Of a stretch of 64,000 bases of DNA, positions 27,013 through 54,100 are shown in pieces. Below the pieces are notes generated by a model. That model saw only the letters and a list, made by a program, of their open reading frames with translations. It was not told where the DNA came from and searched no databases. The position numbers and the translations under genes were made by a program. How positions within the stretch are numbered: the first letter of the stretch is position 1; every line of letters begins with the position of its first letter. The stretch covers positions 146,957-210,956 of the IMG/VR virus record IMGVR_UViG_3300034101_004588; one strand, written 5' to 3'.

Positions 27013-27024
27013 CTATTTTAATAT

Positions 27025-27471
27025 TTACCAGTTTTGTTCATAATATTCTGCTCTGGTTAAAGATGGAGAACCTAATATATTTTCTATTCTTGAAACTACT
27101 TCTTCATCATCAATATTACAAGGACCTCCTACATGCCAATTATATTCTTCTCTTGGTATGCGTTTTTCTCTATAGACATATATTGTAACTATTAATCCGT
27201 CTTCAAACTGTATTACCCATCTAGCTAAAACCTTATCGTCTTCTGTATAAATTGGTTTACCAAATTTATCTATCAATTGTTTGTGTGTTGTTTTTACGTA
27301 TCCTTTTAAACAAGTACCAGATATTTCTATATCATTGCTATTAATTTTTTTTATCTTATAGCGATTTGAAAAGGATCTCAAAGCTTGAACTTTATTTAAA
27401 TCTGCTTCTAAAAGAGATGCATAAACATTTTTTAAGGTTTTAAATTTTTTGGGTATATTACTTTTATTCAT
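27025..27471 (-). CDS. FG-x-P/W-x-I-x-F-x-DG domain protein
   Basis: LLEADLNKVQALRSF; LIDKFGKP...WVIQFEDG...WHVGG. Confidence 0.85.
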   Translation of the reverse strand: MNKSNIPKKFKTLKNVYASLLEADLNKVQALRSFSNRYKIKKINSNDIEISGTCLKGYVKTTHKQLIDKFGKPIYTEDDKVLARWVIQFEDGLIVTIYVYREKRIPREEYNWHVGGPCNIDDEEVVSRIENILGSPSLTRAEYYEQNW

Positions 27472-27472
27472 A

Positions 27473-27871
27473 TTAATACGAATTCCACATTTTTAACCAT
27501 TTATCATAATTTGGTTCTATTTTTCCGTCTATTACCAATTCTCTTAATACCACTTCTGCAACTTTGAAAAGGTGAGAAGTTGGAGGTATTTCTGCATCCA
27601 AACTAGTATATTCACTGTCTGAAAATCTTTTTAAACTTATTAATTCCATTTCTGGTTCTTCTAGAGCCCACTCAAACGTATACCTTGCTTCGTAATGGTC
27701 GTCTTTAGCAATAAAACTTAATATATAAATTTTATTGTCTTTATCATAATCTTCGTTTTCTATTATAAAATCCCTGCCAGGTCCTAAGTCTTTATCAAAA
27801 TCCATAAATTTTTTTAAACCTTGAATCTTATCATATTGAGATTCTAAAAGTATTTGATCCTTGGTTTTCAT
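27473..27871 (-). CDS. putative internal virion protein, paralog of the next gene
   Basis: MKTKDQILLESQYDKIQGLKKF. Confidence 0.85.
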   Translation of the reverse strand: MKTKDQILLESQYDKIQGLKKFMDFDKDLGPGRDFIIENEDYDKDNKIYILSFIAKDDHYEARYTFEWALEEPEMELISLKRFSDSEYTSLDAEIPPTSHLFKVAEVVLRELVIDGKIEPNYDKWLKMWNSY

Positions 27872-27886
27872 TTTTATTATTTAGGT

Positions 27887-28303
27887 TCAATAATCTGGTT
27901 TCCAAAAATGAGGCGGTATTTCTGGTTCCAGTTTACCTGCATCTACCAAGGCTTCTATCTTTTCTTCTGCGTCTATAAAAAGTTTTGAACCAGGTGTTAT
28001 TTCTGCTTCTAGATAATCATAATTTTCATCTGCATATCTTTTTAAACTCAAAAGTTTTATAATATGATCTGGATTCCAACCTTCGTATTTCCACCAAAAA
28101 TTATATCTTGCTTCATAATAATCATCTTTAGCTTTAAAGGATACCACATAAATTTTTGCTTGATAATTCGGAAATTCTGTGTCTTTATATAATATTTGAA
28201 AATGAGAAGGGTCTCCTAAATCCGATTCTCTTTCGGCAAACTTTTTAAGAGCTAAAATTTTATCTGTAGCTTCTCTTAATAATTGTAAATCCTTTTTATT
28301 CAT
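27887..28303 (-). CDS. putative internal virion protein, paralog of the previous gene
   Basis: MNKKDLQLLREATDKILALKKF; ATG at 28303. Confidence 0.85.
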   Translation of the reverse strand: MNKKDLQLLREATDKILALKKFAERESDLGDPSHFQILYKDTEFPNYQAKIYVVSFKAKDDYYEARYNFWWKYEGWNPDHIIKLLSLKRYADENYDYLEAEITPGSKLFIDAEEKIEALVDAGKLEPEIPPHFWKPDY

Positions 28304-28788
28304 GGACCATACCACCTAGTTGATGCTGTGAAATAATCTAAAAAGTCATTGTAATCAGGTTCATTATAAAATGTTGTCAAATAATCATAAGCTTTACTTC
28401 CTAATTCTTCTGTTAAATCTTCAGACCAATTTTTTTTAAATTTTTCATAACCGCCATAATTTTCTAAAGTATCTTTGGTTGCTTTATCGTACAAAGCTTG
28501 GTGTAAGAATCCTTCATACTCTTGTTGTATTTCTCGAGAAGACAAATGGTCATAATAAAAATCTACATTTATTGGATTTAATTCTATATTTCTTTTTACA
28601 TGGTCTAGATATTCTGGTAAAATAGACATATACAATTCTCTGGGAACACCCATGGAAGAGTTTTCATATTCGTCTATGGTTAGTTTTTTAACATGATCTA
28701 AAACATTAAGCTCTTTATTGGCAAATTGTTTAAACGCTTGTATCTTGTCGTATTGAGCTTCTAAAAGTATTTGGTCTTTATATTTCAT
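28300..28788 (-). CDS. putative internal virion protein
   Basis: MKYKDQILLEAQYDKIQAFKQF. Confidence 0.85.
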   Translation of the reverse strand: MKYKDQILLEAQYDKIQAFKQFANKELNVLDHVKKLTIDEYENSSMGVPRELYMSILPEYLDHVKRNIELNPINVDFYYDHLSSREIQQEYEGFLHQALYDKATKDTLENYGGYEKFKKNWSEDLTEELGSKAYDYLTTFYNEPDYNDFLDYFTASTRWYGP

Positions 28789-29129
28789 TAAACAAATAAT
28801 TCTACAACATCTTTAATATCTGGAATTATCATTTCTATATCATCTTGGTCTATCTCTTTTCCTTCTTTATCATAAAGAGGAGTTTCTAAATATTTTTGCG
28901 AAGATACCCAGTTTCTATAAAAATTATCAAATTCTGGTGTAGATAAAAATCCAGCAAATGTTTGTATAGCAGAATTTAATTTATCTATATGTTCATTGTA
29001 CTTGCTAATCATAAGACCGGCTTCTCGGCGATCTTTTTCATCTTTAGAAAAAGATTTTAGTCCTTGAATTTTTAGATTAGTTATTTCTTCTGCAGCTTCT
29101 TGTAATAATTGTAAATCTTTTTTTGTCAT
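28788..29129 (-). CDS. putative internal virion protein
   Basis: MTKKDLQLLQEAAEEITNLKIQGLKSF. Confidence 0.85.
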   Translation of the reverse strand: MTKKDLQLLQEAAEEITNLKIQGLKSFSKDEKDRREAGLMISKYNEHIDKLNSAIQTFAGFLSTPEFDNFYRNWVSSQKYLETPLYDKEGKEIDQDDIEMIIPDIKDVVELFV

Positions 29130-29446
29130 AATTGTTCACTTGCATAAATGCCTAATTTTTTGTGAGCTTCATCTCTGTTTAAGAAATGCCATTTGTTGTT
29201 AGTTGGGTGTATAAAAGCGAATCCTTCTTCAGGTTTTCCTTTATCATACCATTTATCGGCTTCTTCATCACTAGGAATACGACCTAATTTTTTAGGAAGA
29301 TATTCGTCAAATATTTCTCGAAAAACAAAACCATGACCCATGCGAGTTTTATCATGGAATATTTTTCCGTATACTTTAATAGCGGGGTAAAGCTTAATGC
29401 CTCCACGAGCTTCAAAAATCAGACAAATATAATATGTATTAAACAT
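29126..29446 (-). CDS. hypothetical protein
   Basis: 106-aa ORF after TAAATA. Confidence 0.8.
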   Translation of the reverse strand: MFNTYYICLIFEARGGIKLYPAIKVYGKIFHDKTRMGHGFVFREIFDEYLPKKLGRIPSDEEADKWYDKGKPEEGFAFIHPTNNKWHFLNRDEAHKKLGIYASEQL

Positions 29447-29476
29447 ATCATATATTTATAGAAACCAGGTGGTATT

Positions 29477-29995
29477 CTAAAATACTTGCTGCAAAAACTC
29501 TGCTACTTCTTTATCTTTAATAGATTGTCCTTCATGCAGAATCTCACAAACAACCTTATACATATCAAAAGCCTTGCGTTCAAAAAACTTTGTTGCCTCT
29601 TCATATCCTAGAGTCTCAATCCAACAATTCATTTGTGGGTATTGAGGAGCAGCATGGAAGATACATCCATTATGAAAATTACCAATCCAACACAAAAGAA
29701 AGATTGCTCCTTTGACACCTTTTTCTTTAACCATGTATTCAAAGAATACAGCTCGTTCTTCTGGGTCTTTACCTACATACCGATTGAGCTTGGTAATATA
29801 AGAACCGTCTAAAAAGATAATCGAACGGCCTTTAGAAAGAACATGATCCTTTAAAACGGAAACATTATTATCATTCATATAGACCTTACGAATAGTAGGC
29901 CATTTAACATTAACCCCTCTAGAGGAAAAAATAGACGAACCTATCAAAGGTTGTCGATTCATTGACACTTTTTTATTTTGACGAAGATCTATCAT
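29477..29995 (-). CDS. hypothetical protein
   Basis: 172-aa ORF. Confidence 0.8.
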   Translation of the reverse strand: MIDLRQNKKVSMNRQPLIGSSIFSSRGVNVKWPTIRKVYMNDNNVSVLKDHVLSKGRSIIFLDGSYITKLNRYVGKDPEERAVFFEYMVKEKGVKGAIFLLCWIGNFHNGCIFHAAPQYPQMNCWIETLGYEEATKFFERKAFDMYKVVCEILHEGQSIKDKEVAEFLQQVF

Positions 29996-30036
29996 GTTTA
30001 AAATGATAGATTAAATTGGTGGGAAATACAAGAATA

Positions 30037-30216
30037 TTATTCGGTTTTATATCTTTCTTTAATCCATTTAGATTTGAATTTTAAAGTCCAGTCGATCAAG
30101 GCTCGAGGAAATCCAATATCGTAACCCACTTTTTCTGACTCATACCATTTGTGTTTATTGATCTCTTCTTTCATAGCCAAGAATTCTCGGTAAAGGCTAG
30201 TTTTTTCTATATTCAC
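30037..30216 (-). CDS. DUF4032-like small protein (59 aa; missed by the ORF track)
   Basis: GTG start; MNIEKTSLYREFLAMKEEINKHKWYESEKVGYDIGFPRALIDWTLKFKSKWIKERYKTE. Confidence 0.75.
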   Translation of the reverse strand: MNIEKTSLYREFLAMKEEINKHKWYESEKVGYDIGFPRALIDWTLKFKSKWIKERYKTE

Positions 30217-30239
30217 TCTATCTATTAATATTTATCATT

Positions 30240-30710
30240 TTAAGAGGTTATACGAAACGCAAATTCAACACCATCATTAGATTTAACTATTTTAAAACCA
30301 TTTTGTTTATAAAAAGACATTAAATTTTTATGAGATGATTTGTTTTGCCCTGAAGAAATTTCTCCCGGAGATAATGCCATAAGGGTTCCTGAGGGATATT
30401 GCATGGCTAAAGTATTAATGATCTCTGAACCCCTACCTAATCCTCTTTGTGTAGAAAGTATTCTTAATAATTGAATCCATATATAGGTAAATTTTTTTGG
30501 TAGTTTTAAAGACCTTAGATATTTTGCTACCGGATCATTTTTGGGATCATCAAAATAAAAAAGATCAATAACCTCAGATATTGTCAGGTTTTCAGCAACG
30601 TCCCAATCGAAGTCTGCTATTTTTTTACCATCTTCTCGAACTTCTTCTCGAGACATATCAAATTCTAAAGACTCTAGAATTTGTTTTATTTTATTATTGA
30701 ACCGATTCAT
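30240..30710 (-). CDS. GNAT-family acetyltransferase
   Basis: TQRGLGRGSEII acetyl-CoA loop; LMSFYKQNGF. Confidence 0.75.
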   Translation of the reverse strand: MNRFNNKIKQILESLEFDMSREEVREDGKKIADFDWDVAENLTISEVIDLFYFDDPKNDPVAKYLRSLKLPKKFTYIWIQLLRILSTQRGLGRGSEIINTLAMQYPSGTLMALSPGEISSGQNKSSHKNLMSFYKQNGFKIVKSNDGVEFAFRITS

Positions 30711-31062
30711 TTTCAAACCAATAAATCATTCCATTAGGACCTTCTTCCATTTTTAGGTCATCATGTTTGATTCCTACTTTAGAAAGAAGATTGCCTAATC
30801 TTTCTCCAGTCGCTTGAAAATCAAATAAAGAATAATCCGTATTAAAAATTTGTTTATACATTTCATCTAAATCAGAAAACTTTTCTTGGTTATCATAAAT
30901 TTTCTTCTTAGAAAAAAGACTATTGCCGAACATTTCTTTCAAACGAGAAGCAAAGGTTTCAGACAATTCATCATAAGCTTTCATCTGAACTTTTTTCTGT
31001 TCTTTGGCTTGGTTAATTTTACCGTAAGTCTCTTCTAAGAGTATTTGATCTTTATTTTTCAT
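30694..31062 (-). CDS. putative internal virion protein
   Basis: MKNKDQILLEETY. Confidence 0.8.
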   Translation of the reverse strand: MKNKDQILLEETYGKINQAKEQKKVQMKAYDELSETFASRLKEMFGNSLFSKKKIYDNQEKFSDLDEMYKQIFNTDYSLFDFQATGERLGNLLSKVGIKHDDLKMEEGPNGMIYWFENESVQ

Positions 31063-31066
31063 AAAA

Positions 31067-31318
31067 TTATTCTTTAGATTCTGTATATTTTAGATGTCTT
31101 AATATATCTTCAAAGACCTCGACTACATTATTAAAATTACCCCAATAACCTAATCCATCTTGATTCTCGGCCTCATCAATATATTCATTAAAAGCTTCCA
31201 TGACCTTATTTTTAAAACGCCAGAGTTCTTCTTCTTGAAAATCTTGTAAGGCCTGTAGTTTTGGATTTACAATTTTATCCATTTCCGCTTCCAAGAGTAT
31301 TTGATCTTTAGATCGCAT
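31067..31318 (-). CDS. putative internal virion protein
   Basis: MRSKDQILLEAEMDKIVNPKLQALQDF. Confidence 0.8.
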   Translation of the reverse strand: MRSKDQILLEAEMDKIVNPKLQALQDFQEEELWRFKNKVMEAFNEYIDEAENQDGLGYWGNFNNVVEVFEDILRHLKYTESKE

Positions 31319-38047: not shown

Positions 38048-38096
38048 AATACCTAGGTATTAATGGAAGGATTCCCGGGTTTAATACCTAGGTATT
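38048..38096. repeat. two copies of the 14-bp palindrome AATACCTAGGTATT
   Basis: 38048-38061 and 38083-38096. Confidence 0.9.
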
Positions 38097-38115
38097 GATT
38101 GGGAGGAAAGGATTA

Positions 38116-39103: not shown

Positions 39104-39179
39104 TGGTACCTGAGGTGGGACTCGAACCCACACTTGACAGATTTTAAGTCTGTTGTCTCTGCCATTGGACTACTCAGGC
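39104..39179 (-). tRNA. tRNA-Leu(UAA), short variable loop
   Basis: ACAGA-CTTAAAA-TCTGT; variable region only CAAGT; A73; CCA. Confidence 0.92.
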
Positions 39180-40068: not shown

Positions 40069-40404
40069 TTAATCTGTATCTTTAATGAACTTCATAAGCT
40101 GTCTACCCCAATCAAAGAGGTTTTCCGGAAATTCTTTAATAGTTTTCATACTATAGTAAAGATTAAATTCTTCAGGGGTCTTTCCAGGTTTATTTTGTAA
40201 TTGTTCTAAGACGTCTTCAATCCTTTGATTAATTTCTTCTTCTTGACCTATCAAGACCTTTTCTATATCTAATATAAGCCCAAAAACCTGATTGATCTTA
40301 CGGGAGAGCTCCATTATATCTTTTTCTTTATTAGCAAATTCTTTAAAGGCATCAACCTTATTTTGCACCTGATTATAGGCTTCGGATAAACTTTTATTAT
40401 TCAT
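40069..40404 (-). CDS. putative internal virion protein
   Basis: LSEAYNQVQNKVDAFKEF. Confidence 0.8.
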   Translation of the reverse strand: MNNKSLSEAYNQVQNKVDAFKEFANKEKDIMELSRKINQVFGLILDIEKVLIGQEEEINQRIEDVLEQLQNKPGKTPEEFNLYYSMKTIKEFPENLFDWGRQLMKFIKDTD

Positions 40405-40984
40405 TGGTCCATTTATCTATCTTTCTTAACATTTCGGAGAGTTTATGAATTCCTTGGAAGTCATCTCCTAAAATACTATATTCATTTTCTGATCCCCAAT
40501 GAGCCTTACGATAGGCAGGGGGCATATGGTTTAGATTAAATCCTAGGTCTTTGGCATTAGGAGCCCATAAGAGAAATTCTACTTCATTTTTAAGTAAGCG
40601 AGCCAGGATCTCTACTATAACATAAGCCTTATAGGTTCCTTCTAAACCAAAGATATGAAAGTCTCTTTTTTGATTCATTTCAAATTTATAGTTAGTATCT
40701 TGAGGGGTAGGTTTTAAAGGATCGGTATATATCAATAAAGGTTTAGCAGTTGCTCGATTAGGAATTTCCCAGGCCCATACATCATCGAAACCGGACTCTT
40801 GAGTAATTTCATCGTTCTCGGTTATATATTTGTGGGGTCCCAATACTCTTTCTAGATCGGCAATGGAAGCTTTAATGGTCAATTCATTTTTATATTGGTC
40901 TTTAATTTCTTGTTTAAAGAAATTTTTAAAGCCTTGAGCCTTAACATTAGATAAGGTTTCTTCTACAAGTTGATTAAATTTCAT
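40397..40984 (-). CDS. putative internal virion protein, divergent FG-x-P domain
   Basis: MKFNQLVEETLSNVKAQGFKNF; LERVLGP...WAWEI. Confidence 0.85.
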   Translation of the reverse strand: MKFNQLVEETLSNVKAQGFKNFFKQEIKDQYKNELTIKASIADLERVLGPHKYITENDEITQESGFDDVWAWEIPNRATAKPLLIYTDPLKPTPQDTNYKFEMNQKRDFHIFGLEGTYKAYVIVEILARLLKNEVEFLLWAPNAKDLGFNLNHMPPAYRKAHWGSENEYSILGDDFQGIHKLSEMLRKIDKWTNE

Positions 40985-40998
40985 GGATCTATTATTTA

Positions 40999-41412
40999 TT
41001 ATTCTCCGGGTGGAAAGAGAACCTCGTCTTGTAAGGGTTGTTCTAAACGAAATTCCCAGTGATAGGTTTTCTTGCCTAAAGTTGGATTATTAGGTTCGGT
41101 GTAAAGTTCATTCTTATATCCATAGTCATTTAGAGCCTGAGATATGTTTCTTAATTCTCGCACTTTAATCTTAATACGTTGATCAACTCCTATGGCAAAG
41201 AAATCTTCATCAATCCAATCAAATTTTATATAAGAAGATAAATGAGGAACTGTTTGGTTTACTATGTTCTTTATAACTTTGCTTTCGTTATTAGATTCTT
41301 CCGCAGTTCTTTTAGAGGTGTTTTGGGAAAAACTTTTTAAAGCCTGGAGCTTATCATTCTCTAATACCGTTTGATAAACTTCTTTTAAAATTTGTAAATC
41401 CTTATCACCCAT
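40999..41412 (-). CDS. putative internal virion protein
   Basis: MGDKDLQILKEVYQTVLE-NDKLQALKSF. Confidence 0.85.
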   Translation of the reverse strand: MGDKDLQILKEVYQTVLENDKLQALKSFSQNTSKRTAEESNNESKVIKNIVNQTVPHLSSYIKFDWIDEDFFAIGVDQRIKIKVRELRNISQALNDYGYKNELYTEPNNPTLGKKTYHWEFRLEQPLQDEVLFPPGE

Positions 41413-43579: not shown

Positions 43580-44143
43580 TTAAGACCTTGATATACTCAA
43601 TATTTGTGCCTGAGGTATGAGTTTTTCTATTTTAATCTTGGTTCTAGCTCTTTGCTCTTTTTCATCTTCTTCTGATTTTATCCACATCGGCCAAGGTTTA
43701 AGAGTACCAAAGTGAATATAGAATTTTTTTGGTGATGTTATTGTTTTAAAATAATTTAATACCCCTTCTTCGGATTCAAATTGAAAAGGAGGTATTTTAG
43801 ACGAAGTATATATAGATCCTAAAGAATTATCTTCAAGTTCAAAATACCAAGAAACTGTGATAACGGTAGAAACTATATTTTTATTTTTGCTATCAAAAAG
43901 TCGAGTGTGATGTACATCATAAAAAGTAACATCTGTTTCACTAGGATCTCCGAGACTCTCAAAAACATTTTTTGGAATTACTTCAATAGTACTTTTCATT
44001 TGAGGGTTTATCTCAAACTCATCTCTAGTAAATTTACGTTTAATCCTGGTGTAAGAAAAAAAAGATTGTAAACCTCTCAACTTATCATTTTCATTGATAG
44101 AATGGTAAGTTTTTAATAAAGATTGTAGGTCTTTGTTATTCAT
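43580..44143 (-). CDS. putative internal virion protein
   Basis: SINE-NDKLRGLQSF; SLGDP...W. Confidence 0.85.
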   Translation of the reverse strand: MNNKDLQSLLKTYHSINENDKLRGLQSFFSYTRIKRKFTRDEFEINPQMKSTIEVIPKNVFESLGDPSETDVTFYDVHHTRLFDSKNKNIVSTVITVSWYFELEDNSLGSIYTSSKIPPFQFESEEGVLNYFKTITSPKKFYIHFGTLKPWPMWIKSEEDEKEQRARTKIKIEKLIPQAQILSISRS

Positions 44144-44793
44144 CCGTGTATTAGTCTTCTAAACATACCAGCATATTCATCTAAATAATCTGGCAATAAT
44201 TCTAAATTCATGGCATTTTCAAATTCTTTTAATTCTTGTGGAGTCAATGTTCCTTCATTATAACCTGGAGATAAATTTTCAATAGCACTGTTCATATTTG
44301 AGACCATTTCTTGTTGATGTTTTTTTAATATTTTATAATTTTTATCTAAATGCTTTTGCATGTTTTTAACATCCTCTGCAAATTGTGATATTTCTTTATT
44401 GTTTTGTGCAAAGCTTTTTAATCCTTCAAGTTTATTATTTTCTTCTATTGTACCTTCTAAAGTTTTTTTAAGTTCTTCTGCTGCGTCTTCTAAAACTCTT
44501 ACAAAGCCATAAATGTTATCTGCATTAGATTTAGCATCTTTTGAAGCTTCAATTTCATTTTTTAATACTCCACGAAGCCAGGCCATATATTCTTTCTCTT
44601 GAAAGTCATCATCATAAAGTTCAGAAAGAAAATCATCGAATTTATGAAAGAAATCTACAATTCTGTTTTGAATGTATCGTGTTCTTTGTTCGAAATTTTC
44701 TTGTTTACTAAAACTTTTGAGTGCCTGAAGTTTATCATTTTCATTAATCATTTGATAAGCTTTACCTAGAGATTGTAGATCTTTATCTTTCAT
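44140..44793 (-). CDS. putative two-module internal virion polyprotein
   Basis: MINE-NDKLQALKSF and internal TIEE-NNKLEGLKSF. Confidence 0.85.
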   Translation of the reverse strand: MKDKDLQSLGKAYQMINENDKLQALKSFSKQENFEQRTRYIQNRIVDFFHKFDDFLSELYDDDFQEKEYMAWLRGVLKNEIEASKDAKSNADNIYGFVRVLEDAAEELKKTLEGTIEENNKLEGLKSFAQNNKEISQFAEDVKNMQKHLDKNYKILKKHQQEMVSNMNSAIENLSPGYNEGTLTPQELKEFENAMNLELLPDYLDEYAGMFRRLIHG

Positions 44794-44803
44794 TTTTATT
44801 TAC

Positions 44804-45322
44804 TTAACGGGTTTTTTGTTTATTTTTAAAAACAATTCTATCAATACGTTCTTGTATGTCTTTTGCTATCTCGCCAAGTTCTTTGTTTTGTATAGAAGGA
44901 TCGGTTGCTCCTTTATATCTAAAATATACTCTATAACTTATATCACGATAATCATCTCGATAATCTTCGTCTTCATCGCGAGGCAATATAAACTTTTTTG
45001 CTAGGTAATGTTCCAACCAAAAAGGATCTATGTGGTTTGTGCTTATAGCCATTTTTACATTATCTGCAAATTCAATATACCAAGATATTGTTCCATATTT
45101 CCAATCAAGACCACGGTGATATTCATAATGTGAAATTTCATTTGGAGGGCCAAATATATCTGCTATTCGAGTTACATCGTGATGAAAATTTTCAACAAAA
45201 TAAGAATCTTTATATTTTTTAGGATTAAATGTACCTTTGACCTGAAAACGCAAAACGTCATAGGTATAAAAATCTTTAAATCCTTTTAATTTTTTAGCTG
45301 CTCTATTATCTTGATTTTCCAT
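44804..45322 (-). CDS. FG-x-P/W-x-I-x-F domain protein
   Basis: KKLKGFKDF; IFGPP...WYIEFADN. Confidence 0.85.
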   Translation of the reverse strand: MENQDNRAAKKLKGFKDFYTYDVLRFQVKGTFNPKKYKDSYFVENFHHDVTRIADIFGPPNEISHYEYHRGLDWKYGTISWYIEFADNVKMAISTNHIDPFWLEHYLAKKFILPRDEDEDYRDDYRDISYRVYFRYKGATDPSIQNKELGEIAKDIQERIDRIVFKNKQKTR

Positions 45323-46173
45323 TACAGTTTTAAAAGCGTTTGTAATCGGCTTACAACGTCTTGATACTTATTTGCTGGAGAAACTCCAACCCACCAATCT
45401 GTAGGTTCATCTTCTAAAAGATCAAAGTTGTTGCGGGTTAAGTCTTCATCGTCGTCATGTTCTTTGGTGACAAATCCATACATATGAACAAAGGCTCCAT
45501 CATTAAATTCTATATACCAATCAGCCTTAGCTTGATCGGTATCAAAGTAAGCGTCAATATCTCCTTGATAGTCTAAAGAATTAGGAGTCGGATTTATATC
45601 TGACATCTTATCCATCATATCTTCATAACTTACTCCCCCAATAAAAAATTCGGTAGGGCTCATGTCATCTTTTGCTTCTAAGGCTCTTTCTTTCCATTCT
45701 TTATAACTTAAAAATTGAAAGTTTTGAGACATTTTAAAAGATTTTAAACCTTCTAATTTACTTTCTGATATCTGTTCCGGCAATGTTTGTTCTAGATGTT
45801 CACTATAATCTTTAGATATTTTCTCTGGACCAATAACAAACCATTCCAAGATTTCATTTTCTAGCATTTGATCTACCGACAAAGCTAATACAGAGGCGAT
45901 ATAAATTTTTCCTCCGTTGGTAAAGGTTATTTCCCAAGCAATTTTAGTATCTCCTCCTTTAGTTTTATCTATTGAAGGTTCTACTCCTTTAAGATAATTT
46001 TTTAAAATAGGATAGGTAGCAGTAAATTCAAAAACTCCTTCTTTTATTGAAGGGTCTTTAAGAACCAAATCCCATAGATTTACTGGTTTAACTTTCTCTA
46101 TATCAAATCTATTAGCAAAAGACTTTAAAGCGTCTAACTTATTATTTTCTTTTAGATATTGCTTAAAGTTCAT
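45322..46173 (-). CDS. putative two-module internal virion polyprotein
   Basis: MNFKQYLKE-NNKLDALKSF; QISE-SKLEGLKSF; WEITFTNG and WYIEFNDG. Confidence 0.85.
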   Translation of the reverse strand: MNFKQYLKENNKLDALKSFANRFDIEKVKPVNLWDLVLKDPSIKEGVFEFTATYPILKNYLKGVEPSIDKTKGGDTKIAWEITFTNGGKIYIASVLALSVDQMLENEILEWFVIGPEKISKDYSEHLEQTLPEQISESKLEGLKSFKMSQNFQFLSYKEWKERALEAKDDMSPTEFFIGGVSYEDMMDKMSDINPTPNSLDYQGDIDAYFDTDQAKADWYIEFNDGAFVHMYGFVTKEHDDDEDLTRNNFDLLEDEPTDWWVGVSPANKYQDVVSRLQTLLKL

Positions 46174-48326
46174 ATTATGTTTAGAGGTATATTATTTATA
46201 TTAAATTTTTCTGTGACCTCTTCTCTTTTTTTATTAGACCAAACATCAAAAGAATAATTTTGATCGTAATCTATATTTGAACCTTTGGCGTGAGTTTTAA
46301 AAATAGCAATTAAGGTCCCGTCTCCAAATATTATTCCCCACCCTGTATTAAATCTATAGTCCATGCGAAAGTGGGGATAATGAAACACTGTACCTAATCT
46401 TTTTTCTAATTGGGGGTAGGAACTATTGATTTGAAAGGCAAAATATTTATATATTTCCGGAGCCAATCTATCCGGATTAACTATTTCTATAATTTTATTA
46501 CTTTTTTGAAAAGCTTTTAATCCTTCTAGTTTATTACTTTCCTCTTGCACATACACTTCTGAATTTGGAAACATAGAGGATATTCTATTTTTTAAATCTG
46601 GTTTACTTGTTGTTTTTGCTTTCGATTTTTTTGATGGAATATAAACATACCATCTTTCATTTGCAGTTTCTAAATCATAATTAAAATGGTTTTGTCTTTG
46701 CTGTGTATTTTTTAAATAATCCATCATATTACTATTGAGACCTGGTGTAATTATACATTTTAAACCGTCTTTAAATGTAAATGCCCATAATACATATTCA
46801 AATAAAGATTGAGAACTAGTATCCCATTTCCAAGGATCGAAATTGCCTGCAGGAAGATTAAGTTTTTGTGGTTCTCCAAATTTGTTTTTAACTTCTTTTA
46901 AATTAGATACAAAAGATCCCAAACACTCAAATCCCGCATCAGAAAAGTTTGGGTCTTTAGAAATTTCAAATTGTTGAGTATCTAAAAATTGTTTAAATCC
47001 TAATATTTTATTATTTTCTTTTATAATTTGTTTGTTGAGAATGGTTTTTATTCTTTCAACTACATCTAAAGCATTTTGTTCATCCTGATCATTAGCTACA
47101 TAAACATCCCAAGGATGATCTTCATCCGGATCTAATTCTCCAAACATTTCCATAGCATCTTCATTGGTTAATCCTTGTAAAATAACTTTATTACCATCAC
47201 CAAACTCTATACCCCAATTGTAAATAATTGTGTCACCGTTACGAGGATTGACATCTCTTTCAATTCGCGGTTCTCCAAATTTAGATTTTAGATTGTTTAT
47301 CGAAGCATAAAAGTCATCTGTCGGATCTGCGTGCACGTAATTATCAAACCTGTATTCATTATTAATATTTTTTTCCCAATTTTTAAGAGTTTGTTGGTCT
47401 ATTGATCTGAATTGCAATTTACTAAAAAAACTTTTTAAATTTATTAATTTATTATTTTCTTCTATATTTCTTCTAGTCCAAGGCACAACATCTAAATTTA
47501 TTTTTGTTTGTCCTAATATAAATTTAAGACGATCTGATAAATCTTCTTTTTCTTCTGCCCCTTCATAAGTTCCATAAACAGTCCATTTGTCGCTAAAATA
47601 AACAGTTATATCTGCTTTAGAAACCGATCCTGTCTTTAAATAACGATCGGTTACATCTTTTGGAATATAGTTACTGGTGATATACATTGCCTTGCCATCA
47701 GCAAAAGTAATAACCCACATAAAAGCTGAATAAGTGGTATTTGGTAAAGTTTCTACAAAAGGTTTACCAAACAATTGAACTATTTCATTATAATTTTTAA
47801 AAAACTGTCCCATCATTGTAAGATTAGTTTTAGGTAAATCTTTTAAACCCGAGAGTTTAATTATTTTATAACGATTATAAAAATTTTTAAATCCTTGTAA
47901 TTTATTTTCTTTTAAAAGTTTACCACCCTTTTCTTTTATAGCTTGTTTTATTCTTGCAATGTAATCTTTTGGATTCATACCAGATACCGTCCAATAAGTT
48001 ATTTGTTCTAGATTTTTCTTTGCGTTTATGCCAAAAGGTTTTATTTCTTTTAAAGCAGATACAGAAGCCTTTGCTCCGTCTTTAAAAGTAACCAACCATA
48101 TCCAATCTGTTTCATCAAACCCTATTTTTTTTTCTTTTGGAGGTTTACCAAAAGTTTTTAATAAAGCATCATAAGAAACATGAAATCCTTCTACTCTATT
48201 TTCTTGAGAAGGATACATTGGTTGTAAAAAATCACTATATTCTTCCGGTGAATAATCATTTGAAACAAATGCTATTCCGTGAGAAGCTGAAAAATCTTTT
48301 AAAGCTTTTAATTTAAAATTATTCAT
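46170..48326 (-). CDS. five-module putative polyprotein
   Basis: five FG-x-P...W-x-x-x-F-x-DG domains separated by E-N/S-(N)K-L-x-x-(L/F)-K-x-F linkers. Confidence 0.9.
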   Translation of the reverse strand: MNNFKLKALKDFSASHGIAFVSNDYSPEEYSDFLQPMYPSQENRVEGFHVSYDALLKTFGKPPKEKKIGFDETDWIWLVTFKDGAKASVSALKEIKPFGINAKKNLEQITYWTVSGMNPKDYIARIKQAIKEKGGKLLKENKLQGFKNFYNRYKIIKLSGLKDLPKTNLTMMGQFFKNYNEIVQLFGKPFVETLPNTTYSAFMWVITFADGKAMYITSNYIPKDVTDRYLKTGSVSKADITVYFSDKWTVYGTYEGAEEKEDLSDRLKFILGQTKINLDVVPWTRRNIEENNKLINLKSFFSKLQFRSIDQQTLKNWEKNINNEYRFDNYVHADPTDDFYASINNLKSKFGEPRIERDVNPRNGDTIIYNWGIEFGDGNKVILQGLTNEDAMEMFGELDPDEDHPWDVYVANDQDEQNALDVVERIKTILNKQIIKENNKILGFKQFLDTQQFEISKDPNFSDAGFECLGSFVSNLKEVKNKFGEPQKLNLPAGNFDPWKWDTSSQSLFEYVLWAFTFKDGLKCIITPGLNSNMMDYLKNTQQRQNHFNYDLETANERWYVYIPSKKSKAKTTSKPDLKNRISSMFPNSEVYVQEESNKLEGLKAFQKSNKIIEIVNPDRLAPEIYKYFAFQINSSYPQLEKRLGTVFHYPHFRMDYRFNTGWGIIFGDGTLIAIFKTHAKGSNIDYDQNYSFDVWSNKKREEVTEKFNINNIPLNII

Positions 48327-48625
48327 ATACCTTCAAAAAATCCGTTTCTTTCTAAAAAACTATTTAAAATTTCTTTAGCTCTTTCTCTTTCTCCATACCA
48401 ATGTACACCATATAGCTCATTTTCTGGATCATGAATTGTATTATGTACGAATTGCCATAACACCTGCCAATGACTAGATCCTTGAATGACTGTTCTTAAA
48501 TTTAATTGTTCTGGTATATGTTCTCTCATGAAGTCTAAAATCTTTTCATCCAATTCTGAATGTCTGGAAAAAGATTTTAATGCAGACAATTTATTATTTT
48601 CTTTTATATATTTTTTAAAATTCAT
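48323..48625 (-). CDS. putative internal virion protein
   Basis: MNFKKYIKE-NNKLSALKSF. Confidence 0.85.
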   Translation of the reverse strand: MNFKKYIKENNKLSALKSFSRHSELDEKILDFMREHIPEQLNLRTVIQGSSHWQVLWQFVHNTIHDPENELYGVHWYGERERAKEILNSFLERNGFFEGI

Positions 48626-48628: not shown

Positions 48629-49057
48629 TTATCTTTTATTTAATAAATGATCTAATCGTTCTAAAATTTCTTGTTCTCTTCCTATTGGACCAGTTACTTG
48701 TGCTATAACTGGGCTGTCTGGAATAACATTATTTTCCTCATCATAATGCAAATCATGAACTTCAGTACTTAATATAACTTTAACACCATCGTTAAATTCA
48801 ATCCCCCATTCTAAAAATTTTGCTCTACCTGGTCCTTCGTCTGTGAAATCGGGTTCTCCAAATAAATCTATCAAACTATCATATCTATCTACAACCATTT
48901 CTGTCATATAATAATCCATGCCCAACTTTTCTATATCTTTTACTGACATAGAAAAATAAGGTTTTGCATCAAATCTTTTTTTTACCATATATGCTCCTGC
49001 AAATTGTTTAAATGCTTCTAATTTATTTTCTGTATAATATTTTAAAAAAGTTTTCAT
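48629..49057 (-). CDS. FG-x-P/W-x-I-x-F-x-DG domain protein
   Basis: YYTE-NKLEAFKQF; LFGEP...WGIEFNDG. Confidence 0.85.
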   Translation of the reverse strand: MKTFLKYYTENKLEAFKQFAGAYMVKKRFDAKPYFSMSVKDIEKLGMDYYMTEMVVDRYDSLIDLFGEPDFTDEGPGRAKFLEWGIEFNDGVKVILSTEVHDLHYDEENNVIPDSPVIAQVTGPIGREQEILERLDHLLNKR

Positions 49058-49434
49058 GTTAATATATTAGTTAATCTTTCAATCACTTCTTTTGATTTAT
49101 TTTCTGGAGCAGATACACTATAAGCATAAAATTCATCTCCTCTCGACAAATATCTTAACACGGATAATGTATTATCTCCAAATTCTATAATCCAGAGAGG
49201 ACCCATCATGCCGTAAGCTCCGGTTATTGGTTCTCCTAAAAGTTTTTTAACATCTTTATAAGGAGGAGCTTTAGGAAAAACAATTGTTTTATAATTAGCT
49301 AATATATTAGGATCTGCTAATTCGGGATATATTCTGTTAATATCCGCTCGAGTTCTCATCCCTTCTTTGTTTGCTGCTATAATTTGATTGGCTTTAACAA
49401 ATTGTTGAAAACTTTTTAATTTATTTTTATCCAT
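49054..49434 (-). CDS. FG-x-P/W-x-I-x-F domain protein
   Basis: MDKNKLKSFQQF; LLGEP...WIIEFGDN. Confidence 0.8.
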   Translation of the reverse strand: MDKNKLKSFQQFVKANQIIAANKEGMRTRADINRIYPELADPNILANYKTIVFPKAPPYKDVKKLLGEPITGAYGMMGPLWIIEFGDNTLSVLRYLSRGDEFYAYSVSAPENKSKEVIERLTNILT

Positions 49435-50233
49435 GACGTAAAAAATATTCTCTGTCTGCATCAAATTCTTTACGTTCGTAATTAAAATTTGCTATCATAT
49501 CTTTAAAAGGTATGAATATTTCATCACCTTCTTCTGCTTTACGAAATGCTTGTCTGGGTTCTATTTTGCTCCAAAGCATATGAAGACCGGTAGGTTTAAC
49601 TTCTAATATTTCCCCAGTAACACTATACTGATCTGCAACTACTTCTCCGTATTGAGCATAGCTAAAACGTTTACGACCATATATAGTTAAATCCAAATCA
49701 ACAGCGTCTTTAAAAAGATTGTAAAGATCGTAAGAATTTACTAATCGTGAAGAATATTGTAAATTATCATATTTTCGAATTATGTCTCGTCTCTTTTCAT
49801 CACTAACAAAAGATTTTAAACCTTCTAGTTTATTGTTTTCGGATATTTGTTTTAATCCTAATTTATTTAAAATTGTGTTTAAAATATCTTCAGCGTCTTT
49901 ATAAGCATTAACAATTATAGATATGCCTTTATCTTGTTCGTTTGTTAAAAAAACTAAACGAGAAGGTGTTCCTCCCATTTTAAAATCCCAAATATAAGAT
50001 TTATAGTCTCTTGGAATTTTTTTTGAAACCCAAGATCCTCCATGTCCAAATAAATCAGCCAATTGACTTGGATAAATTGTTCGGTCTTTTGGTATTTTAT
50101 AACCAGCTACGGTTTCATTTTGAACCGAAGGATAAGAAGTTTTGAAGTCTCCTGAAGGAATGTATTCAATTTGATTAAACGATTTTAAAGCTTTTAATTT
50201 ATCATTTTCTAATAGATATTGCTTAAAGTTCAC
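49427..50233 (-). CDS. putative two-module internal virion polyprotein
   Basis: MNFKQYLLE-NDKLKALKSF; QISE-NNKLEGLKSF. Confidence 0.85.
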   Translation of the reverse strand: MNFKQYLLENDKLKALKSFNQIEYIPSGDFKTSYPSVQNETVAGYKIPKDRTIYPSQLADLFGHGGSWVSKKIPRDYKSYIWDFKMGGTPSRLVFLTNEQDKGISIIVNAYKDAEDILNTILNKLGLKQISENNKLEGLKSFVSDEKRRDIIRKYDNLQYSSRLVNSYDLYNLFKDAVDLDLTIYGRKRFSYAQYGEVVADQYSVTGEILEVKPTGLHMLWSKIEPRQAFRKAEEGDEIFIPFKDMIANFNYERKEFDADREYFLRHG

Positions 50234-50241: not shown

Positions 50242-50628
50242 TTATTCTTTGATCTCCGGAGTCATCGCATATATATTATAAAGATACAAGACATATTCTT
50301 TAAATTGATCTTGTAAAGAATAAATTGTTAGTTCTTCGAAAGGGTTTGTAGGTTGCATTTCTAAAATACCTTGCAAAGATTCTATAAAAGATAGCATTAT
50401 AGAATCATATCTTTTTGGTCCTATTAATTCTTTTTGTTCTTTGGTGACCATTGATTCATAAGACAAATAGGATTTGACTTGTTCTTGATCTATTTTACCA
50501 TCTTTAACAATATCAATGGGTTTGTTTTCGATAAAAGATTTTAAAGCTTGAACTTTTGGTTCTATTTGTTCTTGAAACACTTTGTCTTCTTTAACAAAGT
50601 CTTTAAAAGCTTTAAACTTTTTTAACAT
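50242..50628 (-). CDS. putative internal virion protein
   Basis: KKFKAFKDF and QIE-PKVQALKSF. Confidence 0.8.
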   Translation of the reverse strand: MLKKFKAFKDFVKEDKVFQEQIEPKVQALKSFIENKPIDIVKDGKIDQEQVKSYLSYESMVTKEQKELIGPKRYDSIMLSFIESLQGILEMQPTNPFEELTIYSLQDQFKEYVLYLYNIYAMTPEIKE

Positions 50629-53222: not shown

Positions 53223-54095
53223 ATGGCTGGATTAAAATTATCGCAAATGACACCTGTAAGTGATATACAGGATGGAGACAGAATATTATTATCTCGCAAA
53301 ATAAACAACCTATGGCGTAGTTTTGTTTTGCCTGGAAGAATTCTAAGCAAATTAGAAACTGGTGGTGTAAACAGAGGAAACGGAACTCCAATATTCATGG
53401 ATAAATCTGGAGAAAATTTAAGATTTAGAACCTTTAAAAGCAGAAACGTTAATTTAGCAATAACTAATGATACAGATGAAATCTTTCTGGAAGCGAAGGT
53501 CAACGGAGCTAATAAAGGTACGGGTAATGATGGCGAACCTATTTTTGCTGGTAAAAATAGTCAAACAGGTACTTTAGAATTTAAAAGAATAAACACCGGT
53601 CGTAATTTAAGAATAGATGATAATCAAAATAGAGTATTGATATCGGTTCCACAAAATTTTTATTTTTTCCGACCAGCAAGACCTGCAAACCCGAACGTAC
53701 ATCCGGTTTTATATCGCAACTCCTGGTCAATGGATAATTTTAGAAACAGAGATTTTAGTACTGGTTGGTTGAGAATACCTGTTCAGGGAGCACCTGATAA
53801 TTGTGATTTGGCTTTAATAAGATGGAAAGTTAATTCAAATCCAGGTGGCAATAGTCAAATAAAAGCAGAAGTACGACAAAAATCTGGCGCCTCTGAATCC
53901 AATAGAATATCTATAGACAGTGTAGGTGGCGCAGGCCCTGCATTTGAAGGTGAGGAAATAATAACTACCGTAGTACAATTTGAACCAAGACAAAATTATT
54001 TTGAAATTAAAATAGATGCAACTGTAGGTGGAACGGCAAGAGTAGGAAATACTTTTTTAACTACTAGAGTTGTTTTGGAAGGCTTTTATTGTTAA
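53223..54095 (+). CDS. probable tail/baseplate structural protein
   Basis: MAGLKLSQMTP N-terminus; two G-x-x-IF...L-x-F(R/K) repeats typical of fibre proteins. Confidence 0.75.
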   Translation: MAGLKLSQMTPVSDIQDGDRILLSRKINNLWRSFVLPGRILSKLETGGVNRGNGTPIFMDKSGENLRFRTFKSRNVNLAITNDTDEIFLEAKVNGANKGTGNDGEPIFAGKNSQTGTLEFKRINTGRNLRIDDNQNRVLISVPQNFYFFRPARPANPNVHPVLYRNSWSMDNFRNRDFSTGWLRIPVQGAPDNCDLALIRWKVNSNPGGNSQIKAEVRQKSGASESNRISIDSVGGAGPAFEGEEIITTVVQFEPRQNYFEIKIDATVGGTARVGNTFLTTRVVLEGFYC

Positions 54096-54100
54096 AAGGA

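What the first reader, a model, noticed from the sequence alone, without database searches (positions are those of the whole stretch)
46170..48326. 718-aa five-module polyprotein whose linkers each regenerate the signal
Seen: five homologous ~140-160-aa domains joined by LLKE|NKLQGFKNF (E140), NIEE|NNKLINLKSF (~290), IIKE|NNKILGFKQF (~437) and VQEE|SNKLEGLKAF (~596). Neighbours 44140-44793, 45322-46173 and 49427-50233 are two-module versions with the same linker. Inference: one packaging event loads a polyprotein that the head protease cuts into separate effectors, each with the same N-terminal tag. This would be a modular cargo cassette that grows by gene fusion.
Basis: partly seen in the sequence, partly recalled or inferred. 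Interest (0 to 1): 0.8.

Follow-up and report, generated by a model that had tools for sequence, protein, structure and literature searches.

The report
Five-module phage head-cargo polyprotein candidate
A distant T4-like lake phage encodes an 83-kDa protein made of five related small domains, each separated by a floppy linker that looks like a cutting site for the phage's own head protease, so one gene may supply five separate proteins carried inside the virus head; the cutting itself has not been shown.

Summary
ORF 46170-48326 (-) encodes 718 aa with five homologous ~120-160-aa modules. Each junction reads [I/L/Q]-x-E followed by (S/N)(N)K[L/I]xx[L/F]KxF. The same motif opens about 20 neighbouring minus-strand genes and occurs nowhere else in the 211-kb genome.

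The genome is a near-complete, uncultured lake-water phage with a T4-type portal, major capsid protein and gp21-type (S77) prohead protease.

Several results fit T4-like L/I-x-E cleavage:
- Neighbours' leaders (MKTFLKYYTE|N, MNFKQYLKE|N) resemble the T4 capsid targeting sequence MKTYQEFIAE|A.
- The capsid protein has IEE|A at the expected maturation position.
- The scaffold protein has the highest [ILVM]xE density in the genome.
- Across four related loci, 21-22 of 23 internal junctions keep [ILVM]-x-E.
- AlphaFold2 predicts disordered linkers between independent domains.

Comparison with relatives shows the same modules as separate genes or fused. Breakpoints lie in the motif-coding repeats.

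My verdict is a new variant of the T4 internal-protein/CTS system: a probable protease-processed cargo polyprotein built by recombination at a shared motif. Cleavage, packaging and module function are inferred, not shown. The 718-aa protein lacks an N-terminal leader, and the motif would stay on the products, unlike in T4.

The parts
46170..48326 (-). 718-aa, 83.6-kDa five-module ORF. It starts at the motif (MNNFKLKALKDF) with no CTS-like leader, and its ATG overlaps the stop of the upstream gene (ATGA).
47907..48326 (-). Module 1 (residues 1-140, 16.0 kDa, pI 9.1). 75% identical to module 1 of L005 gene 4838-6241.
47457..47906 (-). Module 2 (residues 141-290, 17.5 kDa, pI 9.1). Begins NKLQGFKNF.
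47016..47456 (-). Module 3 (residues 291-437, 17.3 kDa, pI 4.6). Begins NNKLINLKSF. Its relatives are a single-module gene in L007 (6626-7063) and module 2 of L006 2445-3353.
46539..47015 (-). Module 4 (residues 438-596, 18.5 kDa, pI 7.9). Begins NNKILGFKQF. Related to module 1 of L006 2445-3353.
46173..46538 (-). Module 5 (residues 597-718, 14.3 kDa, pI 9.1). Begins SNKLEGLKAF. Related to module 2 of L006 3350-4615.
47907..47936 (-). Linker 1 (residues 131-140, KEKGGKLLKE). Predicted coil with pLDDT below 50. Putative cut after E140.
47457..47486 (-). Linker 2 (residues 281-290, VPWTRRNIEE). Predicted coil with pLDDT below 50. Putative cut after E290. Homology with L005 ends just after the following motif.
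47016..47045 (-). Linker 3 (residues 428-437, ILNKQIIKE region). Low-confidence coil. Putative cut after E437.
46539..46568 (-). Linker 4 (residues 587-596, PNSEVYVQEE). Putative cut after E596. P3 is Q, the one non-aliphatic P3 in this protein.
45322..46173 (-). Two-module paralogue (283 aa) with leader MNFKQYLKE|NNKL and internal junction EQISE|SKLEGLKSF. A TATAAATA late-promoter-like site lies 20 nt upstream, at 46193-46200.
48629..49057 (-). Single-module paralogue (142 aa) with the most T4-like leader, MKTFLKYYTE|NKLEAFKQF. It is 81% identical to the second module of a two-module gene in L005. This was the protein modelled (pLDDT 82).
49427..50233 (-). Two-module gene (268 aa) with leader MNFKQYLLE|NDKL and junction KQISE|NNKLEGLKSF. 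Module 2 has a different body.
44140..44793 (-). Two-module gene (217 aa) with the long leader MKDKDLQSLGKAYQMINE|NDKL and junction GTIEE|NNKLEGLKSF. Its bodies are not of the WxIxFxDG family. The two modules are separate adjacent genes in L007 (9782-10123 and 10133-10447).
43580..45322 (-). This span also contains the single-module paralogues 43580-44143 (187 aa) and 44804-45322 (172 aa, leaderless MENQDNRAAKKLKGFKDF).
48323..48625 (-). 100-aa gene with leader and motif (MNFKKYIKE|NNKLSALKSF) and an unrelated body. It sits directly upstream of the 718-aa gene and is translationally coupled to it.
49054..49464 (-). Single-module paralogue (about 135 aa) reading MQTENIFYVMD|KNKLKSFQQF, with Asp instead of Glu at the putative P1.
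50242..50628 (-). First gene of the cluster (128 aa). Leaderless, with two motif copies (MLKKFKAFKDF ... PKVQALKSF).
40069..41412 (-). Three further motif-bearing genes (111, 195 and 137 aa).
25735..31318 (-). Second group of genes with the MxxKDQILLE-type leader. Most also carry the motif (27025-29129, 31067-31318). 25735-27012 (425 aa) and 30694-31062 have the leader only. 27025-27471 has a body of the same fold family (E 5.8e-8).

Best explanation
The 718-aa ORF is a polyprotein form of a large, fast-evolving family of T4-style internal head (cargo) proteins.

Proposed mechanism:
1. The family is expressed from the minus-strand cluster at 24-51 kb and incorporated into the assembling prohead.
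2. The phage's gp21-type serine protease cuts after Glu in exposed [I/L/V/M]-x-E sites.
3. In single-module genes this removes a 9-18-residue T4-CTS-like leader.
4. In multi-module genes the same site recurs in every disordered linker. The 718-aa protein would therefore be cut after E140, E290, E437 and E596 into five products of 14-18.5 kDa.
5. Each product would begin with the amphipathic helix (S/N)(N)K-L-x-x-L-K-x-F. This helix is retained and is shared by modules with unrelated bodies, so it is probably the common handle. It may bind the scaffold core, or a common partner during packaging or ejection.
6. The arrays are made and remade by recombination between the 35-60-nt leader/motif-coding repeats.

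Shown: the anatomy, the homology of the modules, protein-level conservation of junction and motif, presence of a T4-type head module and protease, predicted disorder of the linkers, and module gain, loss and fusion among relatives.

Inferred: packaging, cleavage, the role of the motif, and any effector or anti-defence function.
For: (1) T4-type head machinery in the same genome:
- portal (Pfam Portal_T4, 3e-95);
- S77 protease (99 bits, over cut-off) with T4 His85 and Ser140 conserved and an aligned N-terminal LLVE site;
- Gp23 capsid protein (9e-94).

(2) Protease specificity looks conserved:
- the capsid protein has WCIEE60|AGGN where T4 has FLTE65|AEIGG;
- the gp22-like scaffold has 23 [ILVM]xE sites in 295 aa (7.8% against 1.7% genome-wide), the highest density of all ORFs of 100 aa or more.

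(3) Leaders MKTFLKYYTE|N and MNFKQYLKE|N resemble the T4 IPII/IPIII MKTYQEFIAE|A. In T4, residues 4 and 7 target and residues 8 and 10 direct processing (PMC9026906).

(4) Of 23 internal junctions in four loci, P1 is Glu in 22 and P3 is I/L/V/M in 21, while the rest of each linker is not conserved. The background frequency of [ILVM]xE is 2%.

(5) In the AF2 model of residues 131-450, both domains have pLDDT 70-90, pTM is 0.43, and the linkers 131-140, 281-291 and 433-450 are coil with pLDDT below 50. A helix starts right after each Glu.

(6) Leader and linker are interchangeable in evolution:
- the single-module gene 48629-49057 is the second module of a two-module gene in L005 and L006, but a single gene in L007;
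- the modules of 44140-44793 are two separate genes in L007;
- nucleotide homology with L005 breaks exactly at motif-coding segments.

(7) The motif is selected at protein level and is confined to this cluster.

(8) TATAAATA lies within 60 nt upstream of gene starts 6 times against 0.87 expected. These include the protease gene and gene 45322-46173.
Against: - There is no virion proteome, no transcript data and no cultured phage, so cleavage and packaging are untested.
- The 718-aa protein and several relatives have no N-terminal leader (MNNFKLKALKDF, MSNSKLKALKDF, MKSDKLKSFKDF). A T4-style removable CTS therefore cannot be what targets them.
- Unlike T4, the conserved element lies after the putative cut and would stay on the product.
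- The conserved Glu could simply be part of the motif, for example a helix cap, rather than a cleavage determinant.
- Orthologous junctions are not independent, so the junction statistics are overstated.
- One junction (L007 3453-4385, NNDP|NNKL) lacks Glu, one has Gln at P3, and one N-terminal site has Asp at P1.
- P1' is Asn, Ser or Asp here, whereas the T4 examples I could read have Ala or Ser.
- The exact TATAAATA count in the window is not above shuffles.
- The module fold gives no function.
Confidence: 0.55

Rival explanations
1. An uncleaved tandem-domain protein. The K-L-x-x-L-K-x-F helix is simply the first structural element of each module, and the upstream [ILVM]-x-E is inherited from the ancestral gene start after fusion. 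The 718-aa protein would act as one multivalent 83-kDa molecule, for example a five-fold binder, whether or not it is in the virion.
For: - The motif helix is modelled with fair confidence as part of each domain (pLDDT 73-86).
- Tandem arrays of a small binding domain are common. The weak sequence match is to a BLIP-like protein that is itself a tandem repeat.
- Motif-less two-domain relatives exist (P0015, P0021, P0022).
- The protein has no N-terminal leader.
Against: - The same motif heads modules with unrelated bodies (44140-44793, 48323-48625, 40999-41412), so it is not an element of one fold.
- P3 and P1 are kept in junctions whose other linker residues have diverged completely, which fusion relics without a function would not do.
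- Linkers are predicted disordered, and the domains have no fixed mutual arrangement (pTM 0.43).
- Modules switch freely between separate and fused states.
Confidence: 0.2
2. The motif is a signal for something other than the capsid, such as docking on a host or phage factor, localisation or turnover in the infected cell. The family would be a set of intracellular, possibly early, host-takeover or anti-defence proteins that are never packaged. The leader would be a translation or recombination feature rather than a propeptide.
For: - The cluster lies among non-structural small genes and next to an island of small genes with sigma-70-like promoters.
- There is no homology to any known virion protein.
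- pI values are mixed (4.5-9.1) rather than uniformly basic as in the T4 internal proteins.
- The motif is retained in leaderless members.
Against: - The leaders resemble the T4 CTS in length, in aromatic positions and in the processing residues.
- The junctions carry the motif that is over-represented in this phage's scaffold and present at the capsid-protein maturation site.
- A late-promoter-like TATAAATA precedes at least one cluster gene, as it does the protease gene.
- The conservation is at peptide level, not nucleotide level.
Confidence: 0.2
3. An assembly or gene-calling artefact: adjacent paralogous genes wrongly joined into one long ORF.
For: Paralogous neighbours with repeated 35-60-nt segments could in principle mislead an assembler.
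Against: - An independent run from another study has one 17.8-kb contig over the whole stretch with 8 substitutions and no indel.
- Three further runs give identical fragments.
- Modules share only 23-33% protein identity and no long nucleotide repeats.
- Multi-module genes recur in four related loci from different samples.
Confidence: 0.02

Closest known systems
T4 internal proteins IPI, IPII, IPIII (and Alt) with the capsid targeting sequence, processed by gp21
   Same: - T4-type head module with an S77 protease.
- Short N-terminal leaders of similar length and pattern, ending in [I/L/Y]-x-E (MKTFLKYYTE| against MKTYQEFIAE|).
- Many sequence-unrelated small proteins share only the N-terminal element.
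- The locus is hypervariable between relatives, as described for T-even IP loci (PMC3012670, PMC9026906).
   Different: - No sequence homology to the T4 IPs.
- A second conserved element (K-L-x-x-L-K-x-F) follows the cut site and would remain on the mature protein.
- Some members, including the 718-aa protein, lack the leader altogether.
- Up to five modules are chained in one ORF with the site repeated in each linker. I found no such arrangement described for T4-type internal proteins in the papers read.
- About 20 genes and 27 motif copies, against three IPs in T4.
- pI values are mixed rather than basic.
Inner-body and ejection-protein paralogue families of giant phages (phiKZ gp93-95/162/163, SPN3US families A and B), processed by gp175/gp245
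   Same: - Large paralogous families of head-internal proteins whose numbers vary between relatives.
- A gp21-related protease cuts after Glu in a short x-x-E motif.
- Propeptides with several cleavage sites (PMC5694885, PMC9026906).
   Different: - Those phages use S/A/G-x-E and long (over 100 aa) propeptides that are discarded.
- Here the sites are [ILVM]-x-E as in T4, the segments between sites are folded domains, and no homology to pfam12699-type proteins was found.
- This genome has a T4-type portal and capsid protein.
Polyvalent proteins of phages and conjugative elements (Iyer et al. 2017, PMC5512222)
   Same: One polypeptide carries several modules that are thought to be delivered with the DNA and, in some cases, proteolytically processed. 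Domain shuffling is extensive and attributed to conflict with hosts.
   Different: - Polyvalent proteins combine different, mostly enzymatic effector domains, often with their own Zn-peptidase (MPTase) domain.
- Here the five modules are homologues of one small non-enzymatic-looking fold, and no peptidase domain is present.
- The predicted cutter is the separate prohead protease.
BLIP-like / BamE-like small alpha/beta domains
   Same: A weak profile match of the module's 'Y..L...FG.P ... W' core to both repeats of PDB 3d4e, a putative beta-lactamase inhibitor protein (E 0.011). Both are small helix-plus-antiparallel-sheet domains that occur in tandem.
   Different: The match is not significant. 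Structure searches did not recover it; the best matches were adaptin-appendage platform domains at TM about 0.5 and Z up to 6.5, within the noise range.

Membership tests
T4-type CTS-bearing internal head proteins | N-terminal propeptide of about 10-20 aa ending in L/I-x-E that is necessary for head incorporation | tested here: inconclusive
   Present on most neighbours (MNFKQYLKE|, MKTFLKYYTE|, MKDKDLQSLGKAYQMINE|). Absent from the 718-aa protein itself, which starts MNNFKLKALKDF. Its L006 and L007 orthologues have MNFKEFL(S/K)E|. Necessity for targeting cannot be tested here.
T4-type CTS-bearing internal head proteins | Genome encodes a gp21-type (S77) prohead protease and a T4-type prohead (portal, gp23, scaffold) | tested here: met
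   PF03420 at 99.3 bits, over cut-off, with His85 and Ser140 equivalents conserved. PF07068 at 9e-94. PF07230 at 3e-95. A gp22-like scaffold lies between the protease and capsid genes.
T4-type CTS-bearing internal head proteins | Cleavage after Glu at the L/I-x-E site by the prohead protease | not testable with these tools
   Only the site is seen: [ILVM]-x-E at 21-22 of 23 junctions, in predicted disordered linkers.
T4-type CTS-bearing internal head proteins | Physical presence inside the mature head and ejection with the DNA | not testable with these tools
   The phage is uncultured and known only from lake metagenomes. No proteomic data were available.
T4-type CTS-bearing internal head proteins | Sequence homology to IPI, IPII, IPIII or Alt | tested here: not met
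   No Pfam or PHROG family at meaningful E-values for any of 10 cluster proteins. T4 IPs are themselves unrelated to each other outside the CTS, so this feature is weak.
Polyvalent proteins (Iyer et al. 2017) | Several different effector domains (nucleases, ARTs, methylases and others) in one polypeptide | tested here: not met
   The five modules are homologues of one fold. No known enzymatic domain was detected.
Polyvalent proteins (Iyer et al. 2017) | Frequent embedded peptidase (MPTase) for self-processing | tested here: not met
   No peptidase domain in the 718-aa protein.
Viral polyprotein in the general sense | Independently folded units separated by exposed linkers that each carry the viral protease's consensus site | tested here: met
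   The AF2 model of residues 131-450 shows two confident domains and coil linkers with pLDDT below 50 ending in the x-E site. The four sites are listed.
Viral polyprotein in the general sense | Units are released as separate proteins | not testable with these tools
   Indirect only: the same modules exist as stand-alone genes in relatives.
BLIP-like / BamE-like fold | Significant sequence or structure match to a member | tested here: inconclusive
   PDB profile search gives 3d4e at E 0.011, with both repeats aligned on the FG.P core. Foldseek and VIA searches did not recover it.

The most novel reading that the evidence does not exclude
The retained N-terminal helix (S/N)(N)K-L-x-x-L-K-x-F is a previously undescribed, transferable cargo tag of a T4-superfamily phage lineage, distinct from the removable T4 CTS. 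It would mark about 27 modules with unrelated folds for loading into, or ejection from, the head. The prohead protease would convert polyproteins of up to five modules into individually tagged proteins. The tag-coding sequence would double as the recombination site that shuffles, fuses and splits the modules. Together these would form a natural plug-and-play system for diversifying what a phage injects.
Probability: 0.3. Interest if true: 0.8.

Novelty: new variant of a known kind. Interest (0 to 1): 0.62.

Why it matters
T4's capsid targeting sequence is the textbook example of how a phage loads extra proteins into its head, and it is already used to package foreign proteins. If the reading here is right, it would matter in three ways:
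- A distant T4 relative has expanded that idea into some twenty genes and chained the cargo modules into polyproteins, cut by the same protease that matures the capsid. That would be an economical way to control the amounts of many injected proteins.
- It would show how such cargo sets evolve, by recombination at the shared tag.
- It would provide a second, retained tag whose partner (scaffold, portal or DNA) could be identified and possibly exploited.

It would also imply that environmental T4-like phages inject far more diverse protein sets than the model phages suggest.

If the protein is not cut, the finding reduces to a repeat protein of unknown function in a hypervariable region.

Tried and rejected
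- Family and fold assignment of the module. Pfam and PHROGs gave nothing meaningful for 10 cluster proteins or for distant motif-less relatives. Foldseek against PDB, BFVD and AFDB clusters, the ESM Atlas shape search and VIA-align gave only uncharacterised viral proteins and adaptin-appendage/TBP-like platforms at TM about 0.5 and Z up to 6.5, which is noise level. The BLIP-like sequence match (E 0.011) is only a lead.
- Finding more relatives. blastn of the cluster against cultured phages found no match. The search for related loci failed with the alignment (no conserved stretch). With the 718-aa protein it found no relative. A degenerate DNA pattern for the motif gave 0 hits in viral contigs. 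In metagenome contigs it gave 31 single hits, all chance matches with no body-domain hit. The full-length protein search found only P0002. Relatives came instead from the exhaustive profile search (53 proteins in 1.84 billion) and the look-up of encoding contigs.
- Promoters. The sigma-70 and terminator scan was at background. Exact TATAAATA in the window was not above shuffles, and the one-mismatch scan was uninformative. Only the position-aware genome-wide count gave a modest signal.
- Full-length model. An alignment for the whole 718 aa stacked all modules on module 1 (A2) and was not used. A two-module segment aligned with natural two-module proteins (A3) was modelled instead.
- Joints reported by read laying (46203>47432 and others) have sides of 21-28 nt at low likeness and fall on motif-coding repeats. 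I treat them as cross-matches from related genes, not as deletion variants.
- A nucleotide-level element (RNA or regulatory repeat) as the reason for the motif was rejected because of synonymous variation, including both serine codon families.
- An rRNA or known ncRNA explanation for the GC-rich island at 31.6-38 kb was rejected: there are no Rfam hits besides tRNAs.


Full report
**Context.** The window is the last 64 kb of a 210,956-bp viral contig with 31% G+C, rated 99% complete. It carries these T4-type head genes:
- a portal at window 58743-60653 (Pfam Portal_T4, 3e-95);
- a gp21-type S77 prohead protease at G000:C1:13115-13786 (99 bits, above the curated cut-off);
- a Gp23-family major capsid protein at C1:14979-16442 (9e-94).

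A small basic protein and a 295-aa scaffold-like protein lie between the protease and capsid genes. The portal is only about 27% identical to those of cyanomyophages, and nothing in the cultured-phage collection matches the cluster's DNA. This is therefore a distant, uncultured member of the T4 superfamily. Public runs that hold the sequence are all lake-water metagenomes. The window also has 17-21 tRNA genes and a tmRNA.

**The observation.** ORF 46170-48326 on the minus strand encodes 718 aa. I built an HMM from the bodies of seven modules in neighbouring genes, with leader and motif stripped so that only the domain body counts. It hits the 718-aa protein five times with whole-protein E 1.7e-25. 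It also picked up one extra family member at 27025-27471.

- Pairwise identities between modules are 23-33%.
- The shared core is Y..L...FG.P ... W.I.F.DG ... W.V ... RL..IL.
- The four junctions are LLKE140|NKLQGFKNF, NIEE290|NNKLINLKSF, IIKE437|NNKILGFKQF and VQEE596|SNKLEGLKAF. Cutting there would give products of 16.0, 17.5, 17.3, 18.5 and 14.3 kDa.
- An independent lake run contains a 17.8-kb contig across 45300-50300 with 8 substitutions and no indel, and three more runs give identical fragments.
- The only nucleotide repeats in the cluster are the 35-60-nt leader/motif-coding segments, at 63-85% identity.

The ORF is therefore real, and its modules are anciently diverged paralogues rather than recent tandem copies.

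The motif K-[L/I]-x-x-[L/F]-K-x-F occurs 27 times in about 20 minus-strand genes between 24 and 51 kb, and nowhere else in the genome. It heads modules with clearly different bodies. Genes 44140-44793, 48323-48625 and 40999-41412 and the second module of 49427-50233 do not match the body HMM.

Two kinds of leader precede the motif:
- a 9-10-residue one (MNFKQYLKE|, MNFKKYIKE|, MKTFLKYYTE|);
- a longer one (MKTKDQILLE|SQYDKIQGLKKF, MKDKDLQSLGKAYQMINE|NDKL).

Some genes have the motif with no leader (MNNFKLKALKDF, MLKKFKAFKDF). Two have the long leader without the motif (25735-27012 and 30694-31062). Leader and motif are thus separable elements. Codon tables show synonymous variation at every conserved residue, including both serine codon families. 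The constraint is therefore on the peptide and not on an RNA or DNA element.

**Why a protease site is a reasonable reading.**
- T4 IPII and IPIII begin MKTYQEFIAE|A. In T4 the first ten residues suffice for head targeting: residues 4 and 7 matter for targeting and residues 8 and 10 for processing (PMC9026906). MKTFLKYYTE|N matches this pattern position by position, and MNFKQYLKE|N matches with one residue less.
- The phage's protease keeps the residues aligned with T4 His85 and Ser140. That these are the catalytic residues is from my memory of the literature. The protease also has LLVE aligned with T4's N-terminal LLIE.
- The capsid protein has WCIEE60|AGGN near where T4 gp23 has FLTE65|AEIGG.
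- The scaffold-like protein has 23 [ILVM]-x-E sites in 295 aa, 7.8% against 1.7% genome-wide. This is the highest density of any ORF of 100 aa or more. T4 gp22, which gp21 degrades, makes this the expected pattern.
- Across the window and three non-redundant related loci, 22 of 23 internal junctions have Glu immediately before the motif, and 21 have I/L/V/M two residues earlier. The remaining linker residues are not conserved. The background frequency of the tripeptide in these proteins is 2%. Some junctions are orthologous, so they are not 23 independent trials.
- An AlphaFold2 model of residues 131-450, using an alignment of natural two-module proteins, gives two confident domains (pLDDT mostly 70-90) with no fixed mutual orientation (pTM 0.43). 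Residues 131-140, 281-291 and 433-450 are coil with pLDDT below 50, and a helix starts directly after each Glu.

**How the arrays arise.** Four related loci from different samples carry the syntenic cluster (L005-L008). Module-by-module comparison shows the following:
- The single-module gene 48629-49057 is 81% identical to the second module of a two-module gene in L005. It also corresponds to the second module in L006, but to a stand-alone gene in L007.
- The two modules of 44140-44793 are two adjacent genes in L007.
- Modules 1 and 2 of the 718-aa protein correspond to modules 1 and 2 of a 467-aa protein in L005 (75% and 59% identity), which then continues into an unrelated C-terminal domain.
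- Modules 3, 4 and 5 have their nearest relatives in other genes of L006 and L007, in a different order.

At nucleotide level, homology between the window and L005 runs through junction 2 and stops just after the motif of module 3. It resumes at the start (leader plus motif) of the next gene. The leader and motif of 48629-49057 align with the leader of the L005 two-module gene, while the body aligns from that gene's internal motif onward. This is what unequal recombination between motif-coding repeats would produce. The locus therefore gains, loses, swaps and fuses modules at the motif. 'Grows by gene fusion' is one outcome of that process. In the large protein databases only 53 proteins match the module profile, and only one other protein of comparable length matches the 718-aa protein. 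The five-module form is so far unique to this phage.

**What remains uncertain.**
- Nothing shows that these proteins are in the head or that they are cut.
- The conserved motif lies after the putative cut. The 718-aa protein (like its L005 orthologue) has lost the leader that its L006 and L007 orthologues still have. If the family is head cargo, the retained helix, not a removable CTS, must be the common handle. That differs from T4.
- The conserved Glu could alternatively belong to the motif itself.
- The module fold is a small alpha/beta domain found in other uncharacterised phage proteins. It shows only noise-level resemblance to adaptin-appendage platform domains and a weak sequence match to a BLIP-like protein. 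No function can be assigned. An injected binding or inhibitor role is a guess by analogy with T4 IPI* (PMC3012670).
- Evidence on expression timing is thin. TATAAATA lies within 60 nt upstream of gene starts six times genome-wide against 0.87 expected. One copy lies 14 nt upstream of the protease gene and another 20 nt upstream of gene 45322-46173. The plain count in the window is not above chance.

**Comparison with known systems.** The closest known system is the T4 internal-protein/CTS system. It shares the head machinery, the type of site, the look of the leader, and a hypervariable set of otherwise unrelated small proteins. The differences are the retained second motif, the leaderless members, the size of the family and the chaining of modules into polyproteins.
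- Giant-phage inner-body paralogue families share the idea of many processed head paralogues. They use S/A/G-x-E sites and long discarded propeptides (PMC5694885).
- The 'polyvalent proteins' of Iyer et al. share the idea of one delivered polypeptide with many modules. They combine different enzymatic domains, often with their own peptidase (PMC5512222).

I therefore rate this a new variant of a known kind. My confidence in the protease-processed cargo polyprotein reading is about 0.55.

Noticed in passing
window 31600-38200: An island of 45-55% G+C in a 31% G+C genome, with no Rfam match besides three tRNAs. It holds many small (55-122 aa) minus-strand ORFs. At least nine of them sit directly behind a conserved 45-54-nt element. 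On the coding strand this element reads TTGAGT-17 nt-TACACT, followed about 10 nt later by ATG. That looks like a sigma-70-type promoter with an almost leaderless start.
   Followed up: partly
window 200-1720, 10835-14900, 37260-37412, 39104-39179; tmRNA 15538-15996: A large tRNA set (17 by ARAGORN, 20 by Rfam) plus a full-length tmRNA (135 bits), all on the minus strand. The gene called tRNA-Ile(tat) at 853-942 is unusually long, at 90 nt.
   Followed up: no
window 25735-27012: A 425-aa protein carries the MRTKDQILLE leader of the second gene group but lacks the K-L-x-x-L-K-x-F motif. It has no Pfam or PHROG match. It could be a larger cargo protein that uses the leader alone.
   Followed up: no
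L005:5747-6241, P0009 and P0014 C-termini: In relatives, the orthologue of the 718-aa gene ends in a conserved domain of about 170-215 aa with no family (it ends ...NIR(F/Y)WWRL(W/F)D). This domain is attached through the same E|S(S/N)KL junction. In the window it is replaced by modules 3-5.
   Followed up: partly
window 54089-58711: A 1540-aa ORF directly upstream of the portal gene, with only a weak VWA_2 match (23 bits, below cut-off) and no PHROG hit.
   Followed up: no
window 61671-62840 and G000:C1:5517-6062: Two structural-module genes share a near-identical N-terminus (MK(T/K)LV(T/S)NY(T/S)F(S/N)A(T/A)AKQIT...). Both are preceded by an exact TATAAATA 7-12 nt upstream.
   Followed up: no
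window 2702-4756, 7980-9038, 16796-17899: A class II (B12-dependent) ribonucleotide reductase, a DUF932 protein, and a metallophosphoesterase with an N-terminal HTH or terminase-5-like segment.
   Followed up: no
window 49054-49464: This single-module paralogue has Asp rather than Glu at the putative P1 (YVMD|KNKLKSF). In T4, Asp at that position is reported to block processing but still allow targeting (PMC9026906). If the family is cut, this member may be a natural uncleaved form.
   Followed up: no
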